A stretch of DNA of 64,000 bases, from positions 62,001 to 126,000 of the forward strand of contig NIVC01000056.1 in the NCBI GenBank assembly GCA_002269645.1, in the 5' to 3' direction. Position 1 is the first letter of the stretch; every line of letters begins with the position of its first letter. Source of the DNA: Macrostomum lignano (taxonomy: Eukaryota). Of the stretch, positions 6,621 to 37,715 are shown piece after piece. Made by a program: the position numbers and the translations under genes. The notes under the pieces are model-generated. The model searched no databases. It saw only the letters and a list, made by a program, of their open reading frames with translations, and had not been told where the DNA came from.

Positions 6621-7081
6621 CTAGCAGAATAAATTAAAACCGAAAACAATTGTTAAAAGTGGAATTCTTTAAAAAACTGTTTATTTAATTTGAGCCTATA
6701 TAAAAATCAGTGACAATTGCTTCATATTGGGACACACATTTCAACCCACTCAAGACGCAAAAGCGTGGACACTGCAGCTGAAAATTCCTGTACTGAAGTA
6801 AAAATGTGAGACATACATGGAAGAAGGGTTGAAAATTTTAACAAAATAATAATCAGCAAAGGGTAGCAAATATATATGTAAGCAAGTGGAATCAGTTATT
6901 GAATGAATTAGTGCAACTCACAGCATGGTAGAATATAATTAGTTGTGCATAGTAAAAATGTTTAAGTACATCAGGTTAAAGTCTGTATCTATAAAAAGTA
7001 TAAGATGTTACTAGCCGACCCTTGGGTATGTGGATTAGTGAGTGATAAGAACTGCAGCATGTCGAGAGTTACCAGGCCGAA

Positions 7082-16000: not shown

Positions 16001-16157
16001 CAGACGAAATCACCATCAACCAGCCTAGCCAATGCCTTATGTAGACAGTAGGCCTAGTAATGCAACACTGATTTACATTAGCCATAGCCCATATAGGCAT
16101 AGGCATAGGCCCAATATTTAATTTTAAATATAGATTATAATAATTAAATAAATTTAA

Positions 16158-16384
16158 CAATTAATATAGAGGCCTAGTGAAACTTAGAAAAGAAAGCATT
16201 AAACCTAATAGTGTTTTTAGTTTTTTATAATCTATAACTATAGCCTATTTTTAGTTTTTAGTTTTTTATAATCTATAACTATAGCCTATAGTTATAGATT
16301 ATAGTTATAGATTATAAAAAACTAAAAACACTATTAGGTTTAATGCTTTCTTTTCTAAGTTTCACTAGGCCTCTATATTAATTG
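16158..16384. repeat. Perfect AT-rich inverted repeat (arms of about 85 bp) with local duplications
   Basis: CAATTAATATAGAGGCCTAGTGAAAC...ATAACTAT is mirrored by ATAGTTAT...GTTTCACTAGGCCTCTATATTAATTG. Confidence 0.85.
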
Positions 16385-16660
16385 TAAAATTGTAAAAGAT
16401 TATAAAAAACTAAAAACACTATTAGGCTATTATCTAGTATTACAATGTCAATGTCATATGACAGACACAAATATTGGCAATATAAAGTCGTAAAGACTAT
16501 CATAGACATAAAAAACCCTAGGCCAAATTTTTTTCAAAAACTGTATTTTCTCACGAATAGAACATGAATATTTATTATCGTGATTATTTAACGCTCGAAA
16601 CTATAATCAATTATTGAAATATTTTTTAATGCCACTGTACAGATTAAATATTACTGAATA

Positions 16661-17466
16661 GGCAGTGCTTATTTAGCCGGCACCGGCCGAATAAGTTCGC
16701 TACTATTTAGCCGGCAGTCCTGCCCCACTGCCGGTCAAATAAGCTCGTCACTATTTAGCCGGCAGTCCTGCCCCACTGCCGGTCAAATAATTGCGTCACT
16801 ATTTAGCCGGCAATCCTGGCCCCCAATGGCCACGCCAATATATATATTTATTTGAGATATTTAAACTTTATAAATCTGTAAAGCGAATATAAATCAATGC
16901 AGATTCAGTACAATTTATTACTTGCCTTCAAGTTTGTTTAATTGTTTCTGGAAGTCTTGCATATTCCGGAAATTATTTGTAGCAGCAGAAGACACATTAA
17001 CAATTAAAAAATTAATTATGCATGTTTTACTTTCACTTTAATCTCTGAATCAAAAAACTCCAAAATTGTAGGATAAATAATTAGCTTGTAGTATGTTAAA
17101 TTATTAATTTAAGGTCATGACGAGCAGTGCGCAGTTATAAAATGTATAAATGTATTTTGACCAGCGTGGCCATTGGGCCAGGACTGCCGGCTAAATAGTG
17201 ACGCAATTATTTGACCAGCAGTGGGGCAGGACTGCCGGCTAAATAGTGACGCGCTTATTTGACCGGCAGTGGGACAGGACTGCCGGCTAAATAGTGACGC
17301 GATTATTTGACTGGCAGTGGGGCAGGACTGCCGGCTAAATAGTGACGAGCTTATTTGACCGGCAGTGGGGCAAGACTGCCGGCTAAATAATGGCGAACTT
17401 ATTCGGCCGGTGCCGGCTAAATAGTAGCAAACTTATTCGACCGGTGCCGGCTAAATAAGCACTGCC
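16661..17466. mobile_element. Mutator/foldback-type non-autonomous element with modular TIRs
   Basis: TIR GGCAGTGCTTATTTAGCCGGCACCGG. Perfect 9-bp TSD TACTGAATA (16652-16660 / 17467-17475). The arms are built of 48-bp subrepeats. Confidence 0.9.
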
Positions 17467-18106
17467 TACTGAATATGTATATTTAACAACGATTAAAATC
17501 GAAGGTTTTAAAATTTCAAACTTTTATGTCAGAAATCTAAATCATTAAAACGAATTTTGTGCGCAATTGAAATTCAATTTAAAAGTTTATGCTAAACTGA
17601 AAATATTTTGCAGCCAACATTTTTTTAATCGCTTTGAACGATCCTTAAAAATGTAGCTTTGTACTTTAAAAACACGCAAAGAGCTGATCAGCTGTACAGT
17701 CCTGTAGCGTTTTCTGTGGGATTGCCATGTATTGCTCGTATCTGATTTTTACGAAGGAAAATTTTTCTCTATCGGACTTCTTGCCGGATTTTTCTATAGC
17801 AAAAACTCATTCAGCGCTATGCGTTCCCTAGCTATATACATGTACACTGTAGCAATACACCACGTAGCATTGTATAGCAATACACCAAGCTTCACAGGCC
17901 TCCGGTTCATTTCTAAGAAAATCTTGCATGTAGCGTCTCTCTACTTAAGTTGTCCCAAGGACCTTGGACAGTGGTCTTTGAGTTGTCTATTGCATATCAT
18001 TAAAGGCATAAATATACAGAAATTGTACAGTAGTCTGTACATGCACAATTGGTACATATCAAAATTTTGTAAATTCATCCAATCACCATGCTCTTGACAA
18101 TTTATG

Positions 18107-19907: not shown

Positions 19908-22046
19908 CCCTAGTAACACACTTCGTCGCGGCAACGTCGCGTATTGGTCGCGTTAGGTCGCGAAAGTCGCGGCCTTTATTGGTGAAACTTTGACGTTGCG
20001 AAAACGTCGCGAAAACGTCGGAAATCAAAGTACCAAAAAACGTTGAAATTTAACTTAATCAACCTGTTATACCTTTGATCAGACAGTATCAACTGCAATA
20101 TGTATTGCCTCTGAATTCAATAGATGAAAATAGAAAATGGTAGCCATGTAAATGGCAGTGTGCATGAACAAAAAATCTTCATATGTTTAGAGCAATTAAA
20201 ATAGTTGGAATTATTATGTGTGCAGCAAAAAACTTGGATGCCCCGAATATAGCGACAAACTTAGGCTGCGCTAGTTATTTATGAAACCTTTAATTGTTTA
20301 ATTATTCAGTATCTAAGATACTAAAAATGACTTTTTCAGAAGCACGTAATATAATTAACTAAATTACGTAACAACTTATTTGTATGCAAATTATTAGTGG
20401 TTTTAAAACCGTACCGTATTTATTAACTTGAGTGATTTTTTTAATGGGAGTTACTCTTTCGTGGCATTCGTTTGTTAAACTAACTGTTCCGTGTTTAGCA
20501 ATTCAAAACCAACAGAGCGTCTCTCGGCGTGCCACTGTCACGATCAACCTGCAGTTTTCAGTGGACTCGTTGCGGACTGTGTGCTTAATAAATTGAATAG
20601 TATACTCTTAATTCCCAAGTGTTTAATTATCAGCAGGTTGAAGCATTTGAGGTTGAGTTTTTGCTGTTTTGAACAATTGCTGATTGCTTTGAATGAACCA
20701 GTATTTGCATATTTTTTCTTGACCTGGAATTCAGTGTGTAACGACACAGAATATATCCTGTAAAATATTTTACATGTTTGACCAACACAATACCTTAAAG
20801 TGCAAGTGCAATCTTTTATGCTGGCTGCTAGGTGGCGAGTTAAAGTTTATAAGCAATTAGCATTTTAATTCAGTATAAGGGTATTATTTATCATGTGAGC
20901 TCACTTTTCTAAATTTGCATAGGCCTATTATGTTTATGATAGAATTTTTGCACTTTTGGCCCCACCTTTGTGGCTTGAAGTCAATCTATATATCTATATC
21001 AATATTTATGGTATAACATTGTTAGTTGCAAAGTTCATTAAATAATATTGTTTATTGTGCACAAAAAATTAAATTACTGAGTAATTCACAAAACTTAGAT
21101 GCCTGCCCTGCATTCAGGATTCAGGGTCATCATATATTAAGTTGTTCCATAGTATATTATATAAATGTTTATTGGCAAATATTATATTGGCAATCTTAAA
21201 ATTTGAGACATTGGGACAAACATTTTTCTTTAAAATGCACATTTAAACAAAGTTATGCATAGAAATTGTCTTATCTTTATATTAGATGTTTAATTTACCA
21301 AAAAGTAGAAGAAAAGCTAAATATAGACAACATGAAGCCATCAGTGTATTGGATATTAAAAGTGACTGCTACATTATTCTTAATTATACTTTGTTACAAA
21401 ACAATAACATTTTTAAACTGCTTCAAAATATTCTGATATCTAAATAGAATTCAACAAGGAAGAACTCCCTAGGATTTTACAATCATTGTTTATATTAGAC
21501 TTTCTATAGAATAGTTTATTGTGTAAAATGCTAGTAATGTATCAAGTCACTCTAAATGATTTACAATTAAGTCAATATAAAGAAAGCAGCAGAATGACCA
21601 TCTGCTTATATAGTCATTAAATCATATTGCAAAGCAAAGAGTAAAATTTTGATATTATTCAAATTTCAAATTATCAGATTAATTAAAATTGCCTTTCATA
21701 TTCAAAGATCTGCTTTAAAGCTCAATGTTCTTAGTGCTGTTAGCACCTCATTAATTAAATTAGTAATCACATTTCATTTCATTGTTTTATTTCATTTTGC
21801 AGCAATTTGATATTTGCCTTTCTTGGAATACTACGCTCGTATATTGGCTAATTTTGTATAAGTGCCTGCTGACTTAAAAAGCTTTGTATTTGGAATAATT
21901 AATATCTAGCAAAATAGCAGTTTTATTCAACTTGCCAAATTGAAACTGGTTCAAACTTTGTCATAGTTGAAACTAATCATCATATTGGTAAAATAATCTT
22001 ACTGGTAAACTGCTCTAATCACAATCCAACTGGCTTAAAAATTACA

Positions 22047-23962
22047 ATGTACAATGTATCAAAGAGAGCCCAACAACAAGGAATCAAAAGGAAAGTAAAT
22101 GAATTTTTAACAGAACTAAAGGCTAGTTCAACAAGCACAGCACAAGAAGAATATGATAAAAACCCTCAACTAGATGCGTCAGAGCATGAGATCAGCACTT
22201 TTTTTGCTAGTGAAGGAATTCTTGATGAAACCAGCTACAATTATGATGATACCATTGGCGAATGCAGTGATGATGAGTTCTGTGACAATCAGCCAAAGAC
22301 TGACATCGCCCAAGAAATCAGGAATTGGGCTGTCTTGTATAGAATTCCTGGCAATGCACTATCTGCACTATTAAAAATCCTTGTGAATTTTTTCCCATCC
22401 TTGCCATTGTCATCAAGAACTCTTCTCAAGACTCCAAGGCACACAACATTCACTGCAATGGGCTCTGGAAAGTTCACTTACTTCTTCGGGTTGCAAGACC
22501 TTGTGAACCAAGTGCTGTCTTCATCTGAAAAGCCTCAGCTTCAGATCAACATTGATGGCCTACCAGTTGGAAGCAACTCGAAAAAAGAATTTTGGCCAAT
22601 TCAGGCTTCCATTGGAAAAGACCCGCCAACTATAATAGGTCTGTACTGTGGAGAGCAAAAGCCACCTCTTGAGGAATATTTGAAGGATCTGATTGCTGAG
22701 CTGCAAGGTCTTGAAGACTGGTTCGACATCAAGTTCATATGCGACGCTCCAGCTCGTGCATTCATTAAATGCATCAAGGGACACGGCGGATATTCCTCAT
22801 GCGAGCAGTGTACTGCTTATGGCAGATATGTTGGCCACGTAATTCTGGAAGACATTGATGCCCCATTGCGCACGGATGACTCCTTCAGGCAACAGATTGA
22901 TGAGGAGCACCATACCGGAACAAGCCCCCTGATGGCTTTGAAGATCAATATGATTACAGCTTTCCCACTGGACTACATGCATCTTGTATGTCTTGGGGTG
23001 ATGAAGCGGCTGTTGTTGCAATGGGTTGGCGGTCGACTGCCAAATCGACTGTCTAATCAGCACGTATTGCAAATTTCTGGTCATATCCTGAATGTTGCCA
23101 ATTTCATTCCATCGGAGTTTGCTCGAGAACCGAGACCACTGAGTGAATGCCGGCGTTGGAAAGCGACTGAATTCCGGTCATTTCTGCTTTATTCAGGAAA
23201 AGTTGTACTGAAATCAGTTCTGCCCTCCAAGCTGTACAAGCATTTCTTGCTGCTGAGCGTCGCTATTTTCTGCCTGTGTAATCCTGAAAGGTGCATTCAG
23301 CTGGCAGATTATGCTGCAGAACTCCTTCGGATGTTTGTGTCCGACTGTGCGAAAATTTACGGTGACAATTTCATGAGTCATAATGTGCATTGCCTGCTCC
23401 ATCTACCATCCTGTGTCAAACACAACGGGTCTCTTGACAGTTTTTCTTTGCCTTTAAGTTCGAAAACAATATGCAATCCATCAAAGCAAAACTCAGAACC
23501 AGCAACTTACCATTCGAGCAAGTTTGCAACAGAATTCACGAAGAAAAAAGCATCAACGTGAATCGATCAGCCGCCAAGTCTACAAAATACATTGGCCTGC
23601 ATTGGTCAGGTCCGCTTCCGAATATTCCCCCTTCGTGCATTGAGCAGTACAGAGCGATCATTTCGAGCAGGTTCAGACTGTCCAGTGCCGTAAATGATTC
23701 CTTCATTGAATGCTCAGAAGGCTGCTACTATAGAATCGTGAATGTCCTGCAGGTGGAGAATGAGTCCAGCTTGGTGTGTCGCCGATTCAAAACCAAAGAG
23801 TCATTCTTCGCATACCCTGTTGAATCAGAAAAGATGGGAATCCATGTTGTGTCGAATTTAGATTTAGTTAACCTCTACACACTACGAATTACAGAGGTGA
23901 AGAGAAAGTTCTACGGACTGCCCGTCGACAACAAGGTTGTCCTCACACCCATGTTTCTGTAA
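22047..23962 (+). pseudogene. EnSpm/CACTA transposase with one frameshift near 23447
   Basis: Motifs include LQINIDGLP, FICDAPARAFIKCIKGHGGYSSCEQC, FPLDYMHLVCLGVMKRLL, RWKATEFRSFLLY and NVHCLLHL. Removing 2 nt (TT) at about 23447 restores LDSFSAFKFENNMQ and joins ORFs 22047-23561 and 23471-23962. Confidence 0.88.
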
Positions 23963-23975
23963 AACATCGTTGCAG

Positions 23976-25513
23976 ATGCACTTTTGCGTTGTGGAATTTG
24001 CGGACAAGTCAGTTGAATATGTCAGCGAGGCCTGGCTCGTAGGACGTACCCGCTGTTACTGGCCACCGATAACTGTAGCGAGGGCCATTAAGTTAAGGTC
24101 GAAGCACGCTGCACCGAATTCAGAATGGGAGCTTCATGACATTAAAATTTTGTCGATGACAACCAACGAATGCACGGCACGCCGACGACTCAACCGGGCA
24201 TCATGCGGCACAGAAGAGCTGACAACCGATGCTGAGGCAACAGCCAACAGGAAGCGCACTCAACCGATCCGCTTCATCGATGGGCCTGCTCAGCAAAACA
24301 AAAAAAAAGACGGCAAGGATCGTGTCAGACTCAGATCTAGAGTCATGCGATGGATATGACGATGATGCTGATCTGCCACCTCCATTGCCAAATTTTCGTG
24401 AGTACGCACATTTGAAGTTCGATCTTTGAATTGGCTAAAACAAATTTCAGTAAATCAAATGTTTTAAAACTGTTCATTCTTCTGCAGCCCGCATTAATGA
24501 GACGCCCCGAGCAGCGAGAGGCGGACGCGAAGAGTCAGTGGGATCGTCCAGCTGTGCAGCTGTTCTGTTTGAGGCGGCGCATTTGAATTCGTGCAGGCAG
24601 GATGACGCTGCGCAGTTGACGCAGACGCCGGCTGCTGCTGCCTACCCCGCTCAACAGTCGAACCAGACTCCCCTCTCGAATGCTTTGGGAATGACGCCGG
24701 CAAACAGGCCGCTCTCAGCTGTGCGACCTCCCGCTCCACCGTCAGCTGCTGCCTCCGCTGCCGCAAGTGAACCCAGACTGGCAGTTGCGCCAGATTGTGC
24801 TGCAGGCGCGAGCACGCGTAAGTGTTCACAGATTCATTTGAAATGCTGTTGTTGTGAGAACTAAAATCATGCACGTGTACACCAATGCCATTTTTGCTAA
24901 AGTACAAGAGCACTGTAGTGTGATATCCATGATGAAAATTCCCGCCTTGATGTTTCAGCATTCGAGAAGATTGTTATGAGGGAACTGGCAGCCATCCGTC
25001 AATACGTTGAACGGATTGAACGCACGGTCTCCGCGATCGCGTCACGAAAGAGCGTGGCGGCTCCAAATCTGCCTGTCAACTTGCCGTGCTCGGCAGAAGA
25101 CATGGCAGAACTAGTCCAGCATCTGGAAGAAAATCCAGCGGATGCAGAAGCGCTCGTGAGTGCATCGGCGTTCCTGTTTTTCTTCAATTCTTCTGTTGCG
25201 TGTAAAATAAAAAACAATTAGACAATTTTGCGTAACTGCTTCACTTGCATTACAGGAAGGACAGATGGCCTGCATTGGTGGCGGCAGCACCCAGGATGCA
25301 GTGCGTCGCATTTTGCGCCGGCTGCTGGCTCCGCCGGCTATGGCGAGTTTTAGTTTCGCAGGACGGCGAGAGAAAGCGGCGTTCAAGGACAGCATCCTGT
25401 GGACAATCGTGCGAGGTGCAACGCTACGCAGCGTCAAGGCGAAGGAGAAGGAGATAGAAGCCGCTGTAAAGGAGGTGCTAAAGCATGCAAATGACCCGAA
25501 TCGCGCTCGTTAG
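23976..25513 (+). pseudogene. EnSpm accessory ORF2 (DUF4806-like), 4 exons (23976-24397, 24488-24817, 24959-25155, 25256-25513), one frameshift in the A-run at about 24300
   Basis: The N-terminus MHFCVVEFADKSVEYVSEAWL..CYWPP and C-terminus IGGGSTQDAVRRIL..FSFAG..K.AF..EIEAAVKEVLKHAND fit the accessory protein of animal CMC elements. GT-AG introns keep frame (phases 1, 1, 0). The domain name is recalled, not searched. Confidence 0.72.
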
Positions 25514-26643
25514 CTTCATGTTGGAGGTCCCCTGGCCGCGGGAAAAATAGGCTCCCGAGCCTTGTCAGTTTGTTTCGATTTATTCATGCAGAGTAGGCTG
25601 GAATGGAGAAACTTAGATATAGAAAAATGGGGCGGGAAATTAGCTCTTTCCCTACCTAGTCACCAGATCCCTCCCCACCAAAATTTTAGATTCTAAGACA
25701 AACAGGGGTCGCAAAAACCCGTTCTTTATACCAGTTTTCAGTAATTTTTTAAAAAAAATGGTGAAAACGGTAAAACTGTTTTGTTGGCCTTTTTTGGCTT
25801 AAATTATTTCAAGTGTTATATTATTATGTGTTATATTATATTTATTTACTATATACTGGGCGTTTATTTGCCAATTAAATTGGCTGTTTATTCTAGGAAA
25901 CAAAAAATTTATTAATTAATTAAATGCTGCGTTGCTCTCATTTTTCTCTACTCTAATTACTTTTATCTACTATAATTTTACTCTAATTACCATTCATCGC
26001 TACGTTCTACTATTCATTACCCAGTTCCCAGTTGGTATTTATGTTCCTTTTGTTTGCTATAGCTTTTATTATCTCCTATTGCATAAAATTGCGTACTATA
26101 TTTTTTCAGCGGCTGACATATAGCTGTACAATCCTGGTGCGAGTCGACCTTCGCCAATAAAATATCACCCAGTATCTGATATAAGAAAGTTTATAGTAAC
26201 ACCGGTAGGAAACTGGTAAAACTGCCTATTTTTTAGCATTTTGGTTTTACATTATTTCAGGTATGCGTGCTCACGAGCGTGTATGTCAGTACGTGTGCAT
26301 TACAAATTATCTTGGTGTGCAATTGCTGCTGTGAATTACAGCATTTAAACCTCATAAATTTTTAAACAGCATTTAACGTGGCGATCACCTCTGTGAAACT
26401 GCATTCAAATCAAGAAGTAAGAAACTAACCGCGGCCAACTGTAAACTAGTCGCGTAAAGGTCGCGTAATGGTAATAACGTGACGTCGCTAAGTGAAGTGT
26501 ACGCGACGTCGCGTGGCGCGACACTTGACCCCTTCCCGCGACGTAACTTTGCGACGTTTACGCGACGTTGCCGCGACGAAGTGTGTTACTAGGGCCTGTG
26601 GCGAGCCAACAAAGAATGTAATAAAAATTGAGTAAAGTACATG

Positions 26644-29600
26644 ACTACTAAGCAACGGTAGATGTGTTGATTTTGGAGGTGAGGTGGGTGTCAACCCTCC
26701 TCGCCTCTCATTGGCTGGCGCCCCGATCACTAGGTGATCGATACCCGTATCGATATCGGCGCTCGGCGCGCGCGCGCGCCGCAGGCGCCAAGCGCCGCAG
26801 GCGACCCTCCCCAGCCGTAGGCGCACCTACCGATATTAGATCCCAATAAATCAATCAGATCCCAAATCAATCAGATCCCAAATCAATCAGATCCCAAGCG
26901 CACCCTCCCGAGCCGCAGGCGCCCATGCAGCAGGCGCCCATGCCGCAGGCACCCCGAGTGTACACTCTACCGAGCCGCAGGCACCCCGAGTGTACACTCT
27001 ACCGAGCCGCAGGCACCCCGAGTGTACACTCTACCGAGCCAAAGGTACACTCTACCACTCTCCCGGGCAGAGAGGGGCGGGTGGACAGAGAACCAGCCAC
27101 TAGGTTGTTATACTGTTGAAGCATAGGGAGCGAGAAGTTTTAACCCCGATGCTGACGCAGCCCTGTACACTGAGCGTGTACGGGCAGAGGGTGGGTGGAA
27201 AGAGATGTGAACAACACAGCCTGCTACAGGAGCCGGATAGAGAGGCGCATGCTAGGACAGAGAGGTAGTGTGAGTCACACACACCCCACAGAGAAAGCCA
27301 TACAGAGGATAGAGAGCTCCCTCCCCAGTTGCAGGGGACAGAGAGGCAGGCAGGGTATGCAGGGGCATGCGAACCGTCAAGGGGCCACGCGAGGATAGAG
27401 TGGAGGAGCAGAGATGTGTATGGACAGAGAGCCAGCCACGCGTGCGTAGTGTGAGGGAACAGAAACATATGGAGCAGGAGGGAGATAGGAAGCAAACGCG
27501 CTGGGTAAGGGAGCCACACAGGGCGGTACAGTGAGACACGGGCAGGGGTGGAGCCGTGCGTGGACAGAGCTGAACGGCACGGTCAGCTGCAGGAATAGGA
27601 TGATAGAGAGGCGCGGAGGGGGACAGAGAGCAGTGTGCAGGGGTAGGCAGCCACGCAGGCTGGGGAACAGAGAGGCGCGTGTCAGCCAGTTGCAGCCCGG
27701 GACAGAGAAGTATGAAGGGGGGCCTGGGACAGAGTTCCGAGCAAGGCACAGAGGTAGGGTCCTGTAGCTATGTATAGGCAGGGAGCCACGCGAGGGCAGG
27801 ACAGGGGAGCAGACATGCAAGTTGCATGCAAGGCCAGAGAGGTGTGCGCGGAGGGAGACAGAGAGCAGTGTGTAGGGGTAGGTAACAGCAAACTTTAGTA
27901 GAGGCGCGTGCGGGGACGGAGAAACCAGTCTGAGCGTACAGAGACGTTACAGAGAGGTACACAAACAGAGACCAAAGCGGGCAGAGCACGTGTAGGGACA
28001 GAGACGTGAGGGAGAATCGACCAAAACACGCTATGTATTTTCAAAAGTTGGTTTTAGTGCAGCATATTTAATAGCGGGTAGTATAATAGTATGTACATAG
28101 TAGGTATAATGGTAGTAATAATAGTAAGTATATTAGCCCAAAAGGTAGGCTAAAACAGGCTAAACTGTGTGTACGCATCCACATCACCCCACAAGCCCCC
28201 TCTCCCGCCAGACTCACTCTTCCATACCCTCCTGTATTGCTGCATGAAGGAAAATATAGTGTAAAAATACAGATCTTAACCGTCAGACCGCTGAAATCAG
28301 GGCACACTAGAGGGGGTTTCGGGGTCTGCATGCTCTATGTAAGCTGCTTGAGGAGGTTCCAAGGGCGTTGTGAGGGTTTCCATTATGTTTTGAAAAAAAA
28401 CTAGGGGCTTAAATACAACGTTTTATTCAAAAGTAGGTTATTTTAATGAAATAGCTGACACAATCATTGTCGAGAGTAGAAATTTTTATAAGAAACCAGG
28501 CATTTTAGCAAAAATAAACCTTCAAACCACATAAAATTGAATAAAAAGCAGACATTTTCAATTATAAACCGCAAGTATTTTAATAGAAAAGTAAGCAAAC
28601 AAGGCACAAAACCAGCAAATTTTACCTTTTTATTTTAATGTTACTGATAAGGTAGAGAGTAGAAACTTGTGAGCTGTACGGAGTTAGAAAGTATTAACCA
28701 TTATGTATCGTATGAATTATTAGTTCAGTACCAGCCATTGGTCAAGCGAGCATTTATGAAGTTATTACGAGTGATGAAGGGATAGAGAGCTATATACAGG
28801 AAGACAGTATCCTTCTAAACCACCACGAACAGATTGCTAATAGAGATAAGCTTTGTCTGTGTGCAGTATGAGTAAGCGAAGGCGGGGCAAATACTTTTCC
28901 ACATGCCGGACAGAACAGTATTGTGCTAGGATTTCTCTCGAAATCGCGGTACGTTACTAGTTTTTATCACACCATCCAGATGCGTCAACTAGTCAGCAGT
29001 AGTCATTTATATGTTATTAGAACTTACAAACCCAGGTCAAGTAAATATTACAAAGAGTATATTACGTACACACGCCAACTCCGAATACCAAGCCATACTA
29101 GTCTACTTGCAGTGCTCCTGGAGGGAAGGGACGGCGGGGTGTACATCCGGCAGGGTGGGCGTCCAGCGAGTGTACATCTGACAGGATGGGTGTTCAGCAA
29201 GTGTACATCTGACAGGGTGGGCGTTCAGCAAGTGTACCTTCAGCGTCGAGTAGGTGTACACCCGTCAGTGGGAACTCAGCCCCTCCCACCAATGTCGTGT
29301 GCATGCGGTTAGTCAGTATAGTGGTGGGGTAGACGGTGCAGGAAGGAAACCCAGATGCTGACGCTGCCCTGTACAGCGAGCAACCAGCCCTCCTGTAGCA
29401 GGAGGGGGACAGAGAGTGCGTGGAGGCAGTAGGAGATAGAGGACGCTACCCGGCATGTCGCAGCACGCGGCGCGGGACAGAGAGGCAGTGTGTAAGTCAC
29501 CCCCACAGGGAGAGCTGCCCTGGCAGGAGGCGCGGGACAGAGAGGCGGTGAATCACACCCCACGGAGAGAGCCGTACAGCGAGCTTCCCCACCCGAGTCC

Positions 29601-32600
29601 GGTAAATATTACAGAGTATTACGTGCACACGCCAGCCCTGAATACCAAGCCATACTAGTCTACCTGCAGTGCTCCCAGAGGGAAGGGATGGTCAGGAGTT
29701 ACACACCAAGAATGCATTCATACAAAGAGTACACAACTCGAGCCCAGACACCAAGTCACAGTCTACTTACAGTAGAGATGGTAGATTAATAGCAAGATTA
29801 TATTACAATTAGACCTCCCTAGCACATGAGGAGTGAAATTCAATAATAATTGAATTCAATAATAATACAACATTTAGACGTAGTAATTTAATTACAAAAT
29901 ACCACTAACACTGAGCCAACGAATTGTAGGTTACAAAGGAGTTGCCACTCATATGGAAAGCCAGTATAATGCAGGTGTATATTATTAAAACATAGACAAA
30001 AACGATGCAGACGTATATACACACTATTGATTTTGTACATGTACATTTCGGCATATTACCACACATCGCAGGCACATATTATATATCGGGGGATAGGTTA
30101 AAATACACACATCGTAGATGTAGAAGCAGACACAATGCAGGAAAATTATGATACGAGTGTACATATTAGTGCGTAAAAGTATCATATTATGACACCCTGT
30201 AGCACATATTGACATAATGCAGGGGAAAATATTGACAGAAATAGTACACAATTGTAGAGGTAACAACCCGCCAACTAGTAAGGACATCCAGCACTTGTTC
30301 AGGTTTTTATTATTATTATTGCGCATAAATGTACGCAATTTCCGGTATATAGGACCAAATGTACACAATGTACACAAACACACACACACACACTCAGGCG
30401 CATCCTGCAGCGCATCCTGCAGCACCGATCGCCGCAGGCGATGGCGCCATCGGCAGGAAGCTCTTGCTGTGAATACGCCTGAGTGTGTGTGTGTGTGTTT
30501 GTGTACATTGTGTACATTTGGTCCTATATACCGGAAATTGCGTACATTTATGCGTACAATTATGTCTATGCGCTACATTGTGTGTAGTTCGTTGCCCTGC
30601 GTTTGTAAATACAGTTTAGCCCGTGCACTGCATTGATGCCTACTTTTGTGTTAGGTACCTGCTTTTATTAAATACACTGCACCAAAAGCAACTTTAATCG
30701 GTACATACTGTGTTTTTGTAGAGGTGCCGGTATGCTTTTTAATACATATGTCTTTAGTGTAATTTAGTGTGCTTCTTCAACTTGGCTCGCGAATCTTGCA
30801 CTATGGCTCTCTAGTGGAAAGTACTCTTACTTGTGCTGGTTGCGGGTGATTGTAAGGCTTTCTGCTTGACTTCTTTAGTTTACTTGATGGTTAAATGAGG
30901 AGTGGGAGCTGACGCGCCTACCTCGGGGGAGGAATGCAGCCCTGCGGTCTGATGCAGCGCTTTCTGTTACCCCTCTCCGTCCGCACTGTACTTGGTCTCC
31001 GCTACGATCACCCCTTGGGGTTAAGAGTGGGCGGGTCCTTTGTACTCGACCCTGGGTTAAAAACTCACATTTGGAGGCTCTGGGGAGAGTTGCAGTGGAG
31101 TTCAACAAATTTCTGATAAGATCTCTTGCGGGGGCATGACACTCGTCTCGAAATAATAAAAACCTGAACAAGTGCTGGATGTCCTTACTAGTTGGCGGGT
31201 TGTTACCTCTACAATTGTGTACTATTTCTGTCAATATTTTCCCCTGCATTATGTCAATATGTGCTACAGGGTGTCATAATATGATACTTTTACGCACTAA
31301 TATGTACACTCGTATCATAATTTTCCTGCATTGTGTCTGCTTCTACATCTACGATGTGTGTATTTTAACCTATCCCCCGATATATAATATGTGCCTGCGA
31401 TGTGTGGTAATATGCCGAAATGTACATGTACAAAATCAATAGTGTGTATATACGTCTGCATCGTTTTTGTCTATGTTTTAATAATATACACCTGCATTAT
31501 ACTGGCTTTCCATATGAGTGGCAACTCCTTTGTAACCTACAATTCGTTGGCTCAGTGTTAGTGGTATTTTGTAATTAAATTACTACGTCTAAATGTTGTA
31601 TTATTATTGAATTCAATTATTATTGAATTTCACTCCTCATGTGCTAGGGAGGTCTAATTGTAATATAATCTTGCTATTAATCTACCATCTCTACTGTAAG
31701 TAGACTGTGACTTGGTGTCTGGGCTCGAGTTGTGTACTCTTTGTATGAATGCATTCTTGGTGTGTAACTCCTGACCATCCCTTCCCTCTGGGAGCACTGC
31801 AGGTAGACTAGTATGGCTTGGTATTCAGGGCTGGCGTGTGCACGTAATACTCTGTAATATTTACCGGACTCGGGTGGGGAAGCTCGCTGTACGGCTCTCT
31901 CCGTGGGGTGTGATTCACCGCCTCTCTGTCCCGCGCCTCCTGCCAGGGCAGCTCTCCCTGTGGGGGTGACTTACACACTGCCTCTCTGTCCCGCGCCGCG
32001 TGCTGCGACATGCCGGGTAGCGTCCTCTATCTCCTACTGCCTCCACGCACTCTCTGTCCCCCTCCTGCTACAGGAGGGCTGGTTGCTCGCTGTACAGGGC
32101 AGCGTCAGCATCTGGGTTTCCTTCCTGCACCGTCTACCCCACCACTATACTGACTAACCGCATGCACACGACATTGGTGGGAGGGGCTGAGTTCCCACTG
32201 ACGGGTGTACACCTACTCGACGCTGAAGGTACACTTGCTGAACGCCCACCCTGTCAGATGTACACTTGCTGAACACCCATCCTGTCAGATGTACACTCGC
32301 TGGACGCCCACCCTGCCGGATGTACACCCCGCCGTCCCTTCCCTCCAGGAGCACTGCAAGTAGACTAGTATGGCTTGGTATTCGGAGTTGGCGTGTGTAC
32401 GTAATATACTCTTTGTAATATTTACTTGACCTGGGTTTGTAAGTTCTAATAACATATAAATGACTACTGCTGACTAGTTGACGCATCTGGATGGTGTGAT
32501 AAAAACTAGTAACGTACCGCGATTTCGAGAGAAATCCTAGCACAATACTGTTCTGTCCGGCATGTGGAAAAGTATTTGCCCCGCCTTCGCTTACTCATAC

Positions 32601-35024
32601 TGCACACAGACAAAGCTTATCTCTATTAGCAATCTGTTCGTGGTGGTTTAGAAGGATACTGTCTTCCTGTATATAGCTCTCTATCCCTTCATCACTCGTA
32701 ATAACTTCATAAATGCTCGCTTGACCAATGGCTGGTACTGAACTAATAATTCATACGATACATAATGGTTAATACTTTCTAACTCCGTACAGCTCACAAG
32801 TTTCTACTCTCTACCTTATCAGTAACATTAAAATAAAAAGGTAAAATTTGCTGGTTTTGTGCCTTGTTTGCTTACTTTTCTATTAAAATACTTGCGGTTT
32901 ATAATTGAAAATGTCTGCTTTTTATTCAATTTTATGTGGTTTGAAGGTTTATTTTTGCTAAAATGCCTGGTTTCTTATAAAAATTTCTACTCTCGACAAT
33001 GATTGTGTCAGCTATTTCATTAAAATAACCTACTTTTGAATAAAACGTTGTATTTAAGCCCCTAGTTTTTTTTTCAAAACATAATGGAAACCCTCACAAC
33101 GCCCTTGGAACCTCCTCAAGCAGCTTACATAGAGCATGCAGACCCCGAAACCCCCTCTAGTGTGCCCTGATTTCAGCGGTCTGACGGTTAAGATCTGTAT
33201 TTTTACACTATATTTTCCTTCATGCAGCAATACAGGAGGGTATGGAAGAGTGAGTCTGGCGGGAGAGGGGGCTTGTGGGGTGATGTGGATGCGTACACAC
33301 AGTTTAGCCTGTTTTAGCCTACCTTTTGGGCTAATATACTTACTATTATTACTACCATTATACCTACTATGTACATACTATTATACTACCCGCTATTAAA
33401 TATGCTGCACTAAAACCAACTTTTGAAAATACATAGCGTGTTTTGGTCGATTCTCCCTCACGTCTCTGTCCCTACACGTGCTCTGCCCGCTTTGGTCTCT
33501 GTTTGTGTACCTCTCTGTAACGTCTCTGTACGCTCAGACTGGTTTCTCCGTCCCCGCACGCGCCTCTACTAAAGTTTGCTGTTACCTACCCCTACACACT
33601 GCTCTCTGTCTCCCTCCGCGCACACCTCTCTGGCCTTGCATGCAACTTGCATGTCTGCTCCCCTGTCCTGCCCTCGCGTGGCTCCCTGCCTATACATAGC
33701 TACAGGACCCTACCTCTGTGCCTTGCTCGGAACTCTGTCCCAGGCCCCCCTTCATACTTCTCTGTCCCGGGCTGCAACTGGCTGACACGCGCCTCTCTGT
33801 TCCCCAGCCTGCGTGGCTGCCTACCCCTGCACACTGCTCTCTGTCCCCCTCCGCGCCTCTCTATCATCCTATTCCTGCAGCTGACCGTGCCGTTCAGCTC
33901 TGTCCACGCACGGCTCCACCCCTGCCCGTGTCTCACTGTACCGCCCTGTGTGGCTCCCTTACCCAGCGCGTTTGCTTCCTATCTCCCTCCTGCTCCATAT
34001 GTTTCTGTTCCCTCACACTACGCACGCGTGGCTGGCTCTCTGTCCATACACATCTCTGCTCCTCCACTCTATCCTCGCGTGGCCCCTTGACGGTTCGCAT
34101 GCCCCTGCATACCCTGCCTGCCTCTCTGTCCCCTGCAACTGGGGAGGGAGCTCTCTATCCTCTGTATGGCTTTCTCTGTGGGGTGTGTGTGACTCACACT
34201 ACCTCTCTGTCCTAGCATGCGCCTCTCTATCCGGCTCCTGTAGCAGGCTGTGTTGTTCACATCTCTTTCCACCCACCCTCTGCCCGTACACGCTCAGTGT
34301 ACAGGGCTGCGTCAGCATCGGGGTTAAAACTTCTCGCTCCCTATGCTTCAACAGTATAACAACCTAGTGGCTGGTTCTCTGTCCGCGCCACCCCTCTCTG
34401 CCCGTACACTCTCACTGTACAGGGCTGCGTCAGCGTTAGGGTTGAAACTTCTCGCTCCCTATACCCCACAACCGTGTAGTGTCCTAGTATGGGCGCGACC
34501 TGGGTTCGATTTCGCTAGTTGAGATGTAGGTGAGAGAGGGGAAGAGGCCCGTATCGATGACTACATATCGGTGTACACACATATCGGGGGAGTGTACACT
34601 CGGGGCGCCTGCTGCATACATATCGGTGTACATATAGGGAGAGTGCGCATACATATCGGGAGGGGCGCCTGAGACGGGGAGGGCGCCTGCGGCATACATG
34701 TCGGGGAGGGCGCGTGCGGCGGGGAGGGGCGCCTGCTGCATGGGCGCCTGCGGCTCGGGAGGGTGCGCTTGGGATCTGATTGATTTGGGATCTGATTGAT
34801 TTGGGATCTGATTGATTTATTGGGATCTAATATCGGTAGGTGCGCCTGCGGCTGGGGAGGGTCGCCTGCGGCGCTTGGCGCCTGCGGCGCGCGCGCGCGC
34901 GCCGAGCGCCGATATCGATACGGGTATCGATTACCTAGTGATCGGGGCGCCAGCCAATGAGAGGCGAGGAGGTTTGACACCCACCTCACCTCCAAAATCA
35001 ACACATCTACCGTTGCTTAGTAGT
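26644..35024. mobile_element. 8381-bp non-coding palindromic element, arms about 3.7-3.9 kb, 6-bp TSD (possible non-autonomous Polinton/Maverick-like derivative)
   Basis: Termini ACTACTAAGCAACGGTAG / CTACCGTTGCTTAGTAGT are flanked by TACATG (26638-26643 / 35025-35030). Inner arms about 27085-30314 and 31152-34385 mirror each other (paired ORF coordinates sum to 61466-61467). The central spacer is 837 bp. The structure is certain; the family assignment is inference. Confidence 0.8.
30322..30554. repeat. Nested hairpin in the central spacer: 79-bp perfect inverted arms around a 75-bp GC-rich loop
   Basis: CGCATAAATGTACGCAATTTCCGGTATATAGGACC...CAGGCG (30322-30400) is mirrored at 30476-30554. 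Confidence 0.92.
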
Positions 35025-35169
35025 TACATGAACTTTGAAGTAGCTTCTGACTTTTTCTTTGACATCTCAGAAACCCCCCCCCCACCTGTAATCCCAGTTA
35101 TTTTCTGTGAGCCTTGACGTCTCAGTAATTCTCCCCAGCACAGCACTGTACTATAGCTTCATTTAATTT

Positions 35170-37715
35170 TTATATGACACCTTTCATGTCTGACATGACG
35201 CTTCTTTTGATTTTTATATGACGCTTCTTTTATTCTTCCATGATGCTTCTTAATTTTTTAAATGACACTTTCATTAGTTTTTATATGAGGCTTCTATGAT
35301 TTTACCATGACGCTTCTATTATTGTTTGCATGACGCTTCTATGATTTTTACATAACGCTACTATGATTTTTACATGACGCTTCTATGCTTGTTTACATGA
35401 CGCTTCTATGTTTGTTTACATGACGCTTCTATGCTTGTTTACATGACGCTTCTATGCTTGTTTACATGACGCTTCTATGCTTGTTTACATGACGCTTCTA
35501 TGATTCTTTCATGACGCTTCTATGATTGCTTACATGACGCTTCTATGATTGTTTGCATGACGCTTCTATGATTGTTTACATGACGCTTCTATGATTGTTT
35601 ACATGATGCTTCTATGAATTTTTACATGACGCTTCTATGATTTTACCATGACGCTTCTATTATTGTTTGCATGACGCTTCTATGATTTTTACATGACGCT
35701 ACTATGATTTTTACATGACGCTTCTATGATTTTTTCATGACGCTTCTATGATTTTTTATGACGCTTTTATGACTTTTACATGACGCTTCTATGATTTTTT
35801 ACATGACGCTTCTATGATTGTTTACATGACGCTTCTATGATTTTTTACATTACGCTTCTATGATTGTTTACATGACGCTTTTACGATTTTTTACATGGCG
35901 CTTCTATGATTTTTTATGACGCTTTTTTGAATTTTACATGACGCTTCTATGATTTTTTAAATGACGCTTCTATGATTTTTATATAACGCTTTTACGATTT
36001 TTTAAATGACGCTTCTATGATTGTTTACATGACGCTTCTCTGATTTTTTACATGACGCTTCTATGATTTTTTAGGTGACGCTTCTATGTTTTTTAAATGA
36101 GGCTTCTATGATTTTTCTTGACGCTTCTATAATTGTTTACATGACGCTTCTATGATTTTTTACATGACGCTTCTATGATTGTTTACATGACGCTTCTATG
36201 ATTGTTTACATGACGCTTCTATATTTTTTTAAATGACGCTTCTACGATTTTTTACATGACGCTTCTATGATTGTTTACATGACGCTTCTATGATTTTTTC
36301 ATGACGCTTCTATGATTGTTTACATGACGCTTCTATGATTTTCACATGAGGCTTCTATGATTTTTTCATGACGCTTCTACGATTTTTTATGACGCTTTTA
36401 TGACTTTTACATGACGCTTCTATGATTGTTTACATGACACTTCTATGATTGTTTACATGACGCTTCTATGATTTTTTACATTACGCTTCTATGATTGTTT
36501 GCATGACGCTTTTACGATTTTTTTACATGGCGCTTCTATGATTTTTTATGACGCTTTTTTGAATTTTACATGACGCTTCTATGATTTTTTAAATGACGCT
36601 TCTATGATTTTTATATAACGCTTTTACGATTTTTTACATGACGCTTCTATGATTGTTTACATGACGCTTCTATAATTGTTTACATGACGCTTTTATGATT
36701 TTTTACATGACGCTTCTATGATTGTTTACATGACGCTTCTATGATTTTTTCATGACGCTTCCATGATTGTTTACATGACGCTTTTATGATTTTCACATGA
36801 GGCTTCTATGATTTTTTCATGACGCTTCTATGATTTTTTATGACGCTTTTATGACTTTTACATGACGCTTCTATGATTGTTTACATGACACTTCTATGAT
36901 TGTTTACATGACGCTTCTATGATTTTTTAAATGACGCTTCTATGATTTTTATAAGACGCTTTTACGATTTTTTACATGGCGCTTCTATGATTGTTTACAT
37001 GACGCTTCTATGATTTTTTACATGACGCTTCTATGATTTTTTAAATGACGCTTCTATGATTTTTATATGGCGCTTCTATTATTGTTTACATGACGCTTCT
37101 ATGATTGTTTACATGACGCTTCTATGATTTTTTACATGACCCTTCTATGATTTTTTACATGACGCTTCTATGATTTTTTAAATGACGCTTCTATGATTTT
37201 TACATGAGGCTTCTATGATTTTTTCATGACGCTTCTATGATTTTTTATGACGCTTTTATGACTTTTACATGACGCTTCTATGATTGTTTACATGACGCTT
37301 CTATGATTGTTTACATGACGCTTCTATGATTTTTTAAATGACGCTTCTATGATTTTTATATGACGCTTTTACGATTTTTTACATGGCGCTTCTATGATTG
37401 TTTACATGACGCTTCTATGATTGTTTACATGACGCTTCTATGATTGTTTACATGACGCTTCTATGATTTTTTAAATGACGCTTCTATGATTTTTATATGA
37501 CGCTTTTACGATTTTTTACATGGCGCTTCTATGATTGTTTACATGACGCTTCTATGATTGTTTACATGACGCTTCTATGATTTTTTACATGACCCTTCTA
37601 TGATTTTTTACATGACGCTTCTATGATTTTTTAAATGACGCTTCTATGATTGTTTACATGACGCTTCTGTGATTGTTTACATGACACTTCTATGATTTTT
37701 TACATGACGCTTCTT
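35170..37715. repeat. 23-bp satellite (ATGACGCTTCTATGATTGTTTAC)n, roughly 110 copies
   Basis: Direct tandem periodicity, with recurring variant blocks that suggest higher-order duplication. Confidence 0.96.

What the first reader, a model, noticed from the sequence alone, without database searches (positions are those of the whole stretch)
26644..35024. 8.4-kb transposase-free palindromic element with a 6-bp TSD and (ACT)n termini: candidate new class of giant non-autonomous element
Seen in sequence: the element is almost entirely one inverted repeat, sits between a perfect TACATG duplication, ends in a trinucleotide repeat (5'-ACTACTA...TAGTAGT-3'), and encodes no recognisable protein. Established knowledge: a 6-bp TSD, long TIRs and short tandem repeats at the very ends are Polinton/Maverick hallmarks tied to protein-primed replication. 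Canonical Polintons are described with 5'-AG ends, whereas here the same trinucleotide has the opposite polarity, and the arms are several times longer than usual. Inference: this is a parasite of a Polinton-like or other integrase-coding element that could replicate as a panhandle/hairpin molecule, or it belongs to an unrecognised family. A 7-bp reading of the TSD (TACATGA) is possible but makes the ends asymmetric.
Basis: partly seen in the sequence, partly recalled or inferred. Interest (0 to 1): 0.85.

Follow-up and report, generated by a model that had tools for sequence, protein, structure and literature searches.

The report
Foldback-type non-coding transposon in flatworm
This is a genuine 8.4-kb insertion in the flatworm Macrostomum lignano made almost entirely of one long inverted repeat with no genes, and it looks like an unusually long-armed "foldback" DNA transposon, not a relative of Polinton viruses; I found only this one copy, so its family cannot yet be named.

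Summary
Window 26644-35024 is an 8,381-bp element, 90% inverted repeat. Its ends match perfectly (5'-ACTACTAAGCAACGG...) and it sits between two TACATG copies. It has no credible ORF or Pfam domain. The window is Macrostomum lignano, assembly Mlig_3_7, contig NIVC01000056.1.

The anatomy is that of a foldback-type non-autonomous TIR transposon:
- a 296-bp terminal domain, 98% alike between the two ends;
- a minisatellite domain that differs between the arms;
- a 3.25-kb inner domain with no substitution between the arms;
- an 837-bp non-coding middle.

A 12-nt motif occurs 11 times in the window, only in the two subterminal regions, mirror-oriented (0.03 expected). That pattern resembles transposase-binding repeats.

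The same window holds a second palindromic non-coding element of 12.6 kb with a 7-bp TSD, and an 808-bp one, also with a 7-bp TSD. This architecture is therefore recurrent here.

The Polinton reading is not supported. The termini are AC..GT, not AG..CT. "(ACT)n" is only two units. There are no Polinton genes. The IS3EU/GingerRoot and Dada signatures also fail. A 7-bp TSD reading remains open.

I could reach no other copy, so TSD length, copy number and the autonomous partner are untested. Interest is modest.

The parts
26638..26643 (.). Left copy of the target-site duplication TACATG (or 26638-26644 if the TSD is read as 7 bp, TACATGA)
26644..26939 (+). Left terminal domain of the inverted repeat (296 bp). 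It starts ACTACTAAGCAACGG. It contains two short palindromes, a (GC)n run and three copies of a 16-bp tandem unit (26848-26897).
   Evidence: 98.3% identical to the right terminal domain; the first 51 bp are identical.
26940..27063 (+). Left variable minisatellite domain (32-bp unit x3.1). It does not align with its counterpart in the right arm.
26778..27017 (+). Left cluster of the subterminal 12-nt motif GCMGYAGGCRCC (6 copies on the + strand)
   Evidence: 11 matches in the 64-kb window, all in the two ends of this element; 0.03 expected
27064..30314 (+). Left inner domain of the arm (3,251 bp). It includes a GA-rich degenerate repeat block (about 27.07-28.0 kb), a 31-bp x3.2 tandem repeat (29139-29237) and a 75-bp direct repeat (29060-29134 and 29617-29691).
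   Evidence: No substitution against the right arm from 27083 to 30314.
30315..31151 (.). Middle domain (837 bp), unique and non-coding. It contains its own small inverted repeat (82-nt arms at 30322-30403 and 30473-30554).
31152..34404 (-). Right inner domain, the mirror of 27064-30314
34405..34726 (-). Right variable minisatellite domain (322 bp). It holds a 45-bp unit x2.1 and an extra copy of a repeat unit that is also present in the inner domain.
   Evidence: (I8)
34604..34888 (-). Right cluster of the subterminal 12-nt motif (5 copies on the - strand)
34727..35024 (-). Right terminal domain (298 bp), ending ...CCGTTGCTTAGTAGT
35025..35030 (.). Right copy of the target-site duplication TACATG

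Best explanation
The element is a non-autonomous class II (TIR) DNA transposon of the foldback architectural type in the Macrostomum lignano genome.

Shown: it is an insertion. Its perfectly matching ends abut a 6-bp (or 7-bp) duplication of the target, which is the footprint of staggered cleavage and repair by a DDE-type transposase or integrase.

Shown: it encodes nothing recognisable.

Inferred: it must have been moved by an enzyme supplied from elsewhere in the genome.

Inferred: that enzyme probably recognises the conserved terminal approximately 50-300 bp. It may use as extra binding sites the short palindromes, the 16-bp triple repeat and the mirror-oriented 12-nt subterminal motif cluster.

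Inferred: the multi-kb arms arose by extension of the inverted repeat. An internal inverted duplication would have recruited interior sequence into the arms, together with expansion and contraction of tandem repeats, as described for Galileo and other foldback elements. This explains why the inner 3.2 kb of the arms is identical while the outer 296 bp and the minisatellites differ.

The superfamily is unresolved. No autonomous relative and no second copy could be reached.
For: Insertion signature: perfect ends and a TACATG duplication, with unrelated flanks.

Foldback anatomy, seen:
- a terminal domain;
- a tandem-repeat domain that differs between the arms;
- an inner domain;
- a non-coding middle domain.
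This is the layout that PMC4079207 gives for foldback elements.

Literature parallel. In Galileo the longest TIRs occur in non-autonomous copies. They grow by tandem-repeat expansion and by inverted duplication of internal sequence. The repeat numbers differ between the two TIRs of one copy, and subterminal repeats carry secondary transposase-binding sites (PMC3573991).

Subterminal motif: 11 copies, found only in the two ends, in mirror orientation, with 0.03 expected.

No coding capacity.

Same architecture elsewhere in the window, with clean TSDs: a 12,568-bp element at 38903-51470 (TSD ACTTTAG) and an 808-bp element at 16660-17467 (TSD ACTGAAT). Ordinary active-looking transposons sit alongside: a hAT family at 99.8-99.9% identity with four different 8-bp TSDs, and an EnSpm-like element with a 3-bp TSD.
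Against: Only one copy was seen, so mobility as a family, the TSD length and the terminal consensus are not established.

No known foldback or cut-and-paste family that I could check combines a 6-bp TSD with AC..GT ends. Drosophila-type foldbacks have TSDs of 7-10 bp.

The arms (3.7-3.9 kb) are about three times the longest Galileo TIR reported in PMC3573991 (1.25 kb).

The zero divergence of the inner arms could partly reflect consensus collapse in the PacBio/Canu assembly (assembly method: PMC5730564). That would make the 'recent extension' inference weaker.
Confidence: 0.75

Rival explanations
1. It is a non-autonomous derivative or parasite of a Polinton/Maverick-like element. A retrovirus-type integrase would insert it, giving the 6-bp TSD. 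It would perhaps be copied by protein-primed replication that uses the terminal ACTACT iteration.
For: The 6-bp reading of the TSD agrees with Polintons (PMC10045372). The element has long inverted ends. It has a two-unit trinucleotide iteration at the very end.
Against:
- Two units of ACT are expected by chance about once in 64.
- No polymerase, integrase, ATPase, protease or capsid remnant is in the element.
- No such domain was found in the nine longest ORFs tested elsewhere in the window.
- Neither of the two M. lignano genome papers searched in full text mentions Polinton or Maverick, and the supplementary files of one of them, also searched, do not either. This is weak evidence.
- The subterminal motif array and the tandem-repeat TIR domains are typical of cut-and-paste elements.
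- Neighbouring elements with the same architecture have 7-bp TSDs.
- A 7-bp reading is also possible here.
Confidence: 0.05
2. It is a non-autonomous member of another 6-bp-TSD group (IS3EU/GingerRoot-like or Dada-like), or of a still unclassified TIR superfamily.
For: The 6-bp TSD reading fits. IS3EU and GingerRoot usually give 6 bp, and Dada gives 6-7 bp. The ends match none of the families whose signatures I could check, which leaves room for an unclassified group.
Against: IS3EU and GingerRoot are reported with TA..TA (occasionally TG..CA) termini. No shift of the boundaries gives such ends together with a duplication. Dada elements have no terminal inverted repeats and sit inside small-RNA genes; here the TIRs are perfect, and no tRNA or Rfam family is found anywhere in the window. 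One copy cannot define a superfamily.
Confidence: 0.12
3. It is a 7-bp-TSD foldback element of a P/Galileo-like or Mutator/foldback-like lineage. The true duplication would be TACATGA, and the two ends would be offset by one base.
For: TACATGA is present on both sides. The two other non-coding TIR elements in the window have 7-bp TSDs. Galileo has 7-bp TSDs and long, internally repetitive TIRs. MuDR-type elements make 4-10-bp TSDs and most foldbacks are assigned to Mutator.
Against: It requires unequal ends, whereas the 6-bp reading gives ends that are perfectly symmetric to the last base. The termini resemble neither of the two 7-bp-TSD elements, nor the hAT family, nor the EnSpm-like element in the window. 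No THAP/P-type or MULE transposase was seen in the ORFs tested.
Confidence: 0.2
4. It is an assembly artefact, either a fold-back chimeric PacBio read or a collapsed repeat, and not a real palindrome.
For: The assembly is Canu on early PacBio data from a very repeat-rich, partly duplicated genome (PMC5730564). The inner arms are suspiciously identical: 0 substitutions in 3.2 kb.
Against: - The flanks are not mirror images and carry a clean TSD.
- The centre is 837 bp of asymmetric unique sequence with no spacer-less fold point.
- The arms differ in minisatellite content (124 bp against 322 bp) and by substitutions in the outer 296 bp.
- A second, unrelated palindromic element with its own TSD lies 4 kb away.
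Confidence: 0.04

Closest known systems
Foldback (FB-type) transposons, e.g. Tetris of Drosophila virilis
   Same: The long inverted arms have the same layered layout: a terminal domain, a tandem-repeat domain of variable copy number and an inner domain. A middle domain of variable content has no coding capacity. The element is non-autonomous and flanked by a TSD. It lies next to satellite arrays (PMC4079207).
   Different: The TSD is 6 (or 7) bp here, against 8-10 bp for Tetris. The arms are 3.7-3.9 kb. There is no sequence relation. Family behaviour (many copies with variable arms) could not be checked.
Galileo (P superfamily, Drosophila)
   Same: Galileo has long, internally repetitive TIRs, and the longest ones are in non-autonomous copies. 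TIR growth occurs by tandem-repeat expansion and by inverted duplication of interior sequence. The two TIRs of one copy differ in repeat number. Subterminal repeats serve as extra transposase-binding sites. The TSD is 7 bp, which matches the alternative reading here (PMC3573991).
   Different: Galileo TIRs reach about 1.25 kb, whereas these arms are about three times longer. Under the symmetric reading the TSD here is 6 bp. No P-type transposase partner is known for this element.
Polinton/Maverick
   Same: A 6-bp TSD (PMC10045372) and inverted ends.
   Different: There are no polymerase, integrase or capsid genes. The termini are AC..GT, not AG..CT. The element carries a subterminal motif array and minisatellite domains. 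The arms make up 90% of the element.
IS3EU / GingerRoot
   Same: TSDs are usually 6 bp, and these are TIR elements (PMC10045372).
   Different: The reported TA..TA (or TG..CA) termini are absent. No transposase is present. No long arms are described for these families in the source I read.
The 12.6-kb palindromic element in the same window (38903-51470)
   Same: It is non-coding, with long inverted arms (a 1,089-bp perfect outer part followed by 20-bp satellite arrays in mirror orientation). It has a clean TSD and lies in the same genome.
   Different: Its termini are unrelated (they start CACCCGACGAC). Its TSD is 7 bp (ACTTTAG). It shares no sequence with element 1.

Membership tests
Foldback-type TIR transposon (architectural class) | Long terminal inverted repeats that contain tandem repeats, whose copy number can differ between the arms | tested here: met
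   arms of 3,671 and 3,873 bp; 16-bp, 32-bp, 45-bp and 31-bp tandem units; the minisatellite block is 124 bp on the left and 322 bp on the right
Foldback-type TIR transposon (architectural class) | Middle domain without coding capacity; the element is non-autonomous | tested here: met
   no Pfam domain, and stop density like shuffled sequence
Foldback-type TIR transposon (architectural class) | Target-site duplication at the ends | tested here: met
   TACATG on both sides (6 bp; a 7-bp reading is possible)
Foldback-type TIR transposon (architectural class) | A dispersed family of copies with shared ends | not testable with these tools
   No eukaryotic genome DNA search is available. No other copy was found in the window, in 66 kb of other M. 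lignano loci or in the viral and metagenome collections.
Polinton/Maverick | [quoted passage not shown] | tested here: not met
   no domains and no long open frames
Polinton/Maverick | Capsid, packaging ATPase and protease genes | tested here: not met
Polinton/Maverick | 6-bp TSD | tested here: inconclusive
   6 bp with symmetric ends, or 7 bp with offset ends; only one copy
   the ends are 5'-AC...GT-3'
Polinton/Maverick | For a non-autonomous derivative: ends shared with a gene-bearing Polinton in the same genome | not testable with these tools
   The M. lignano genome cannot be searched by DNA here.
IS3EU / GingerRoot | 6-bp TSD with TA..TA (occasionally TG..CA) termini (PMC10045372) | tested here: not met
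   the TSD length may fit, but the terminal dinucleotides do not, whatever the boundary shift
Dada | No terminal inverted repeats; insertion at fixed sites inside tRNA or snRNA genes; 6-7-bp TSD (PMC3706591) | tested here: not met
   the TIRs are perfect, and no small-RNA gene was detected anywhere in the window
P superfamily / Galileo-like | 7-8-bp TSD | tested here: inconclusive
   TACATGA is readable on both sides, but it makes the ends unequal
P superfamily / Galileo-like | THAP-domain P-type transposase in autonomous copies with the same ends | not testable with these tools
   No other copy could be retrieved.
hAT family Mlig006260 (present in the window) | Shared termini (starting TAGAGGTCGGACGGGAT) and 8-bp TSD | tested here: not met
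   the termini and the TSD length both differ
Long-read fold-back assembly artefact | Spacer-less perfect palindrome with mirrored flanks | tested here: not met
   an asymmetric 837-bp centre, different flanks with a TSD, and arms that differ in minisatellites

The most novel reading that the evidence does not exclude
The element is the first-seen non-autonomous member of a TIR transposon lineage not yet classified in flatworms. It would be defined by AC..GT ends, a true 6-bp TSD and a mirror-oriented GCMGYAGGCRCC subterminal array. An integrase-type enzyme would move it, possibly one related to Polinton or IS3EU/GingerRoot integrases. Its multi-kb perfect arms would be maintained by intramolecular conversion.
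Probability: 0.12. Interest if true: 0.6.

Novelty: new member of a known kind. Interest (0 to 1): 0.3.

Why it matters
If it is simply a foldback-type element, the value is mostly for annotation. Published M. lignano repeat libraries discarded unclassified repeats, and about 10% of the assembly is unclassified repeat detected only by a de novo repeat finder (PMC5730564).

Multi-kb perfect palindromes such as this one and its 12.6-kb neighbour are likely sources of assembly breaks, ectopic recombination, hairpin RNA and satellite seeding in a genome already known to be hard to assemble.

A confirmed 6-bp TSD with non-canonical ends would add a new lineage to the small set of 6-bp-TSD eukaryotic transposons. 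Nothing here yet shows that.

Tried and rejected
Searches for other copies (none found):
- blastn of the element against the rest of the window: 0 hits.
- blastn against three other M. lignano loci, 66 kb in all: 0 hits.
- Exact look-ups of five of the element's own ORFs in the gene-position index: none on record. The neighbouring 504-aa ORF was not on record either.
- Protein search with the as-is open frame that covers the right terminal 450 bp: no hit.

The third protein search was not spent. The collection shows no sign of holding M. lignano reads. The intact 504-aa ORF had no hit above 50% identity. The Logan contigs clustered with the hAT protein are unrelated to it at the DNA level.

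Homeologous empty site. There is no annotated gene within 10 kb of the element. The zf-BED gene turned out to be a multi-copy hAT transposase in non-syntenic contexts.

Candidate partners in the window. The hAT and EnSpm-like elements were rejected because their termini and TSDs differ.

Nested insertion. I checked whether the inner palindrome is a separate element nested in a short TIR element. There is no TSD at its boundaries, and the boundary lies inside a repeat array.

I relied instead on open segments of at least 80 aa and on stop density.

In one search a script printed the open segments run together as one string.

An ORF in the centre of the second element (42580-42969) reminded me of an IS1595/Merlin-type transposase, but Pfam gave no support, so I make no claim.


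Full report
**Source.** The 580-aa zf-BED ORF at window 56492-58234 is on record at NIVC01000056.1 of GCA_002269645.1. Papers identify that accession as the Macrostomum lignano Mlig_3_7 assembly. The assembly was built with Canu from PacBio plus Illumina/454 data. The genome is more than half repetitive (13% tandem repeats, 10% repeats unclassified) and contains about 180 Mb of near-identical duplicated blocks (PMC5730564). The window corresponds to about 62001-126000 of that contig. A nuclear-receptor zinc finger and an actin gene confirm a metazoan context.

**The observation.** It is correct.
- The element runs from 26644 to 35024 (8,381 bp).
- Its two ends are exact reverse complements for the first 51 bases and start ACTACTAAGCAACGG. 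Complementarity stops exactly at the ends.
- TACATG lies immediately outside on both sides.
- The terminal 23-mer occurs nowhere else in the window, even with three mismatches.
- The arms are 3,671 and 3,873 bp, which is 90% of the element.

Two points in the finding are overstated or open. First, the '(ACT)n' terminus is only two units. Second, the base following TACATG is A on both sides, so a 7-bp duplication with ends offset by one base cannot be excluded from one copy.

**Anatomy.** Aligning the left arm with the reverse complement of the right arm shows three layers.
1. The outer 296/298 bp are 98.3% identical (3 substitutions and one 2-bp indel in a GC run). This layer holds two short palindromes and a 16-bp unit repeated three times.
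2. A block follows that does not align: 124 bp on the left (32-bp unit x3.1) against 322 bp on the right (45-bp unit x2.1 plus an extra repeat unit).
3. The inner 3.25 kb comes next. After a few differences at its outer edge and one homopolymer indel, it shows no substitution over 3,232 bp. The contrast with the outer layer is significant (Fisher p = 6e-4).

The centre, 30315-31151, is 837 bp of unique sequence with its own small inverted repeat.

A 12-nt motif, GCMGYAGGCRCC, occurs 11 times in the 64-kb window, against 0.03 expected. All copies lie in the two subterminal regions: on the + strand at the left and on the - strand at the right.

**Coding capacity.** The longest open stretch is 189 codons. 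Stop counts per frame (50-73 in 1,505 codons) are close to shuffled sequence (81 +/- 8), and the lower counts fall on the strand with skewed composition. Twenty open segments of at least 80 aa give nothing above Pfam thresholds. No Rfam family reaches gathering score, and there is no tRNA gene in the window.

**Artefact?** A missed-adapter fold-back read would give a spacer-less palindrome with mirrored flanks and identical arms. Here the flanks are unrelated and carry a TSD. The centre is asymmetric. The arms differ in minisatellite content and by substitutions near the ends. I consider misassembly unlikely. However, the perfect identity of the inner arms may be exaggerated by consensus collapse, because reads from the two arms cannot be told apart.

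**Context in the window.** The neighbourhood is a transposon landscape (coordinates and TSDs verified).
- A second palindromic, non-coding element spans 38903-51470 (12,568 bp). Its outer arms are 1,089 bp and perfect. Mirror-oriented 20-bp satellite arrays follow them. Its termini start CACCCGACGAC, and its TSD is 7 bp, ACTTTAG.
- An 808-bp element at 16660-17467 has TIRs built of tandem units and a 7-bp TSD, ACTGAAT.
- An EnSpm/CACTA-like element at 19908-26594 has a 3-bp TSD (CCT). It carries a 504-aa DUF4218-type transposase ORF with thousands of animal homologues. Element 1 sits 43 bp beyond that element's TSD, not inside it.
- A 5.3-kb hAT element at 54546-59880 has an 8-bp TSD. It is 99.8-99.9% identical to three other copies, which lie in unrelated contexts and each have a different 8-bp TSD.

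None of these shares ends or sequence with element 1. So long-armed, gene-free TIR elements recur in this genome, alongside ordinary and apparently young cut-and-paste families.

**What it most likely is.** The layered arms, the non-coding middle and the flanking TSD match the published scheme for foldback elements. That scheme has a terminal domain, a tandem-repeat outer domain, an inner domain and a middle domain without coding capacity. [quoted passage not shown]

Galileo offers a worked example of the dynamics. Its longest TIRs are in non-autonomous copies. Growth occurs by tandem-repeat expansion and by duplicating interior sequence in inverted orientation. The two TIRs of one copy hold unequal repeat numbers. 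Subterminal repeats act as secondary transposase-binding sites (PMC3573991).

On that model, the identical inner 3.2 kb is a recent extension of the arms, or a tract kept identical by conversion between the arms. The older outer 296 bp and the motif array are what the mobilising enzyme recognises. The steps rest on different bases:
- the insertion by staggered cleavage is shown by the TSD;
- trans-mobilisation is inferred from the lack of genes;
- the binding role of the motifs and the origin of the arms are inferences by analogy.

**Comparison with 6-bp-TSD families.**
- Polintons make 6-bp TSDs. But the ends here are AC..GT, there is no Polinton gene or remnant, and a two-unit terminal iteration is not evidence of slide-back priming.
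- IS3EU/GingerRoot usually make 6-bp TSDs but have TA..TA (occasionally TG..CA) ends. No boundary shift yields such ends together with a duplication.
- Dada makes 6-7-bp TSDs, but it lacks TIRs and sits in small-RNA genes.
- MuDR-type elements make 4-10-bp TSDs, and most foldbacks have been assigned to Mutator. P/Galileo makes 7-8 bp.

The superfamily therefore stays open. Candidates are an unclassified 6-bp lineage and a 7-bp P- or Mutator-like foldback.

**Limits.** The tools offer no DNA search of eukaryotic genomes, so the decisive evidence was out of reach: other copies, their TSDs, an autonomous partner and an empty homeologous site. All indirect routes came back empty.

**Verdict.** This is a real and tidy foldback-type non-autonomous transposon with exceptionally long, nearly perfect arms. 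The Polinton interpretation is unsupported, and the 'new class' claim is premature. I rate it a new member of a known kind, of modest interest. There is a small chance (about 0.12) that it marks an unclassified 6-bp-TSD lineage.

Noticed in passing
window 38903-51470 (TSD copies at 38896-38902 and 51471-51477): A second giant palindromic, apparently non-coding element of 12,568 bp. The outer arms are 1,089 bp and 100% complementary. Mirror-oriented 20-bp satellite arrays follow (about 39.8-41.9 kb and 47.3-50.4 kb), around a centre of about 5.4 kb. Termini start CACCCGACGAC; the 7-bp TSD is ACTTTAG. It is unrelated in sequence to the element in question.
   Followed up: partly
window 16660-17467: An 808-bp MITE-like element whose inverted ends are built of tandem units of about 58-60 bp. 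Termini start AGGCAGTGC; the 7-bp TSD is ACTGAAT.
   Followed up: partly
window 19908-26594: A 6.7-kb EnSpm/CACTA-like transposon with TIRs starting CCCTAGTAACACACTTCGTCGCGG, CGTCGCG-type subterminal repeats and a 3-bp TSD (CCT). Its 504-aa ORF (22047-23561) has 2,896 homologues across animals, many annotated 'transposase domain-containing' or DUF4218. The best identity is 46-50%, and most homologues listed are longer (about 550-730 aa), so the ORF may be incomplete.
   Followed up: partly
window 54546-59880; L002, L003, L004: A 5.3-kb hAT transposon (termini start TAGAGGTCGGACGGGAT; 8-bp TSD CTGACAAA). It is 99.8-99.9% identical to three other copies in unrelated contexts, each with its own 8-bp TSD, so the family looks very young. 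The window copy's transposase ORF is 580 aa, against 671 aa in the others. The copy differs in length by a single base, which is consistent with one frameshift.
   Followed up: partly
window 35193-37700; also 2154-3060, 5979-6657, 63316-63990: Large minisatellite or satellite arrays: a 23-bp unit directly downstream of the element, and units of 21, 32 and 20 bp elsewhere. The 23-bp array begins about 170 bp from the insertion site.
   Followed up: no
window 61739-62881 (- strand): A 380-aa open frame with a nuclear-receptor C4 zinc finger (Pfam E = 1e-23). No gene is called at this position in the gene calls listed for the locus.
   Followed up: no
window 52993-54283: An actin gene with one 160-bp intron (376 aa). 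It lies between the second palindromic element and the hAT copy.
   Followed up: no
window 16151-16391: A 243-bp stretch that is 89% identical to its own reverse complement (a small stand-alone palindrome). It lies just upstream of the MITE-like element.
   Followed up: no
L005-L011 (Logan contigs): A 45-aa Logan protein is placed in the same 90% cluster as the hAT transposase. It comes from contigs with no detectable DNA similarity to the M. lignano hAT, so this cluster membership looks spurious.
   Followed up: partly
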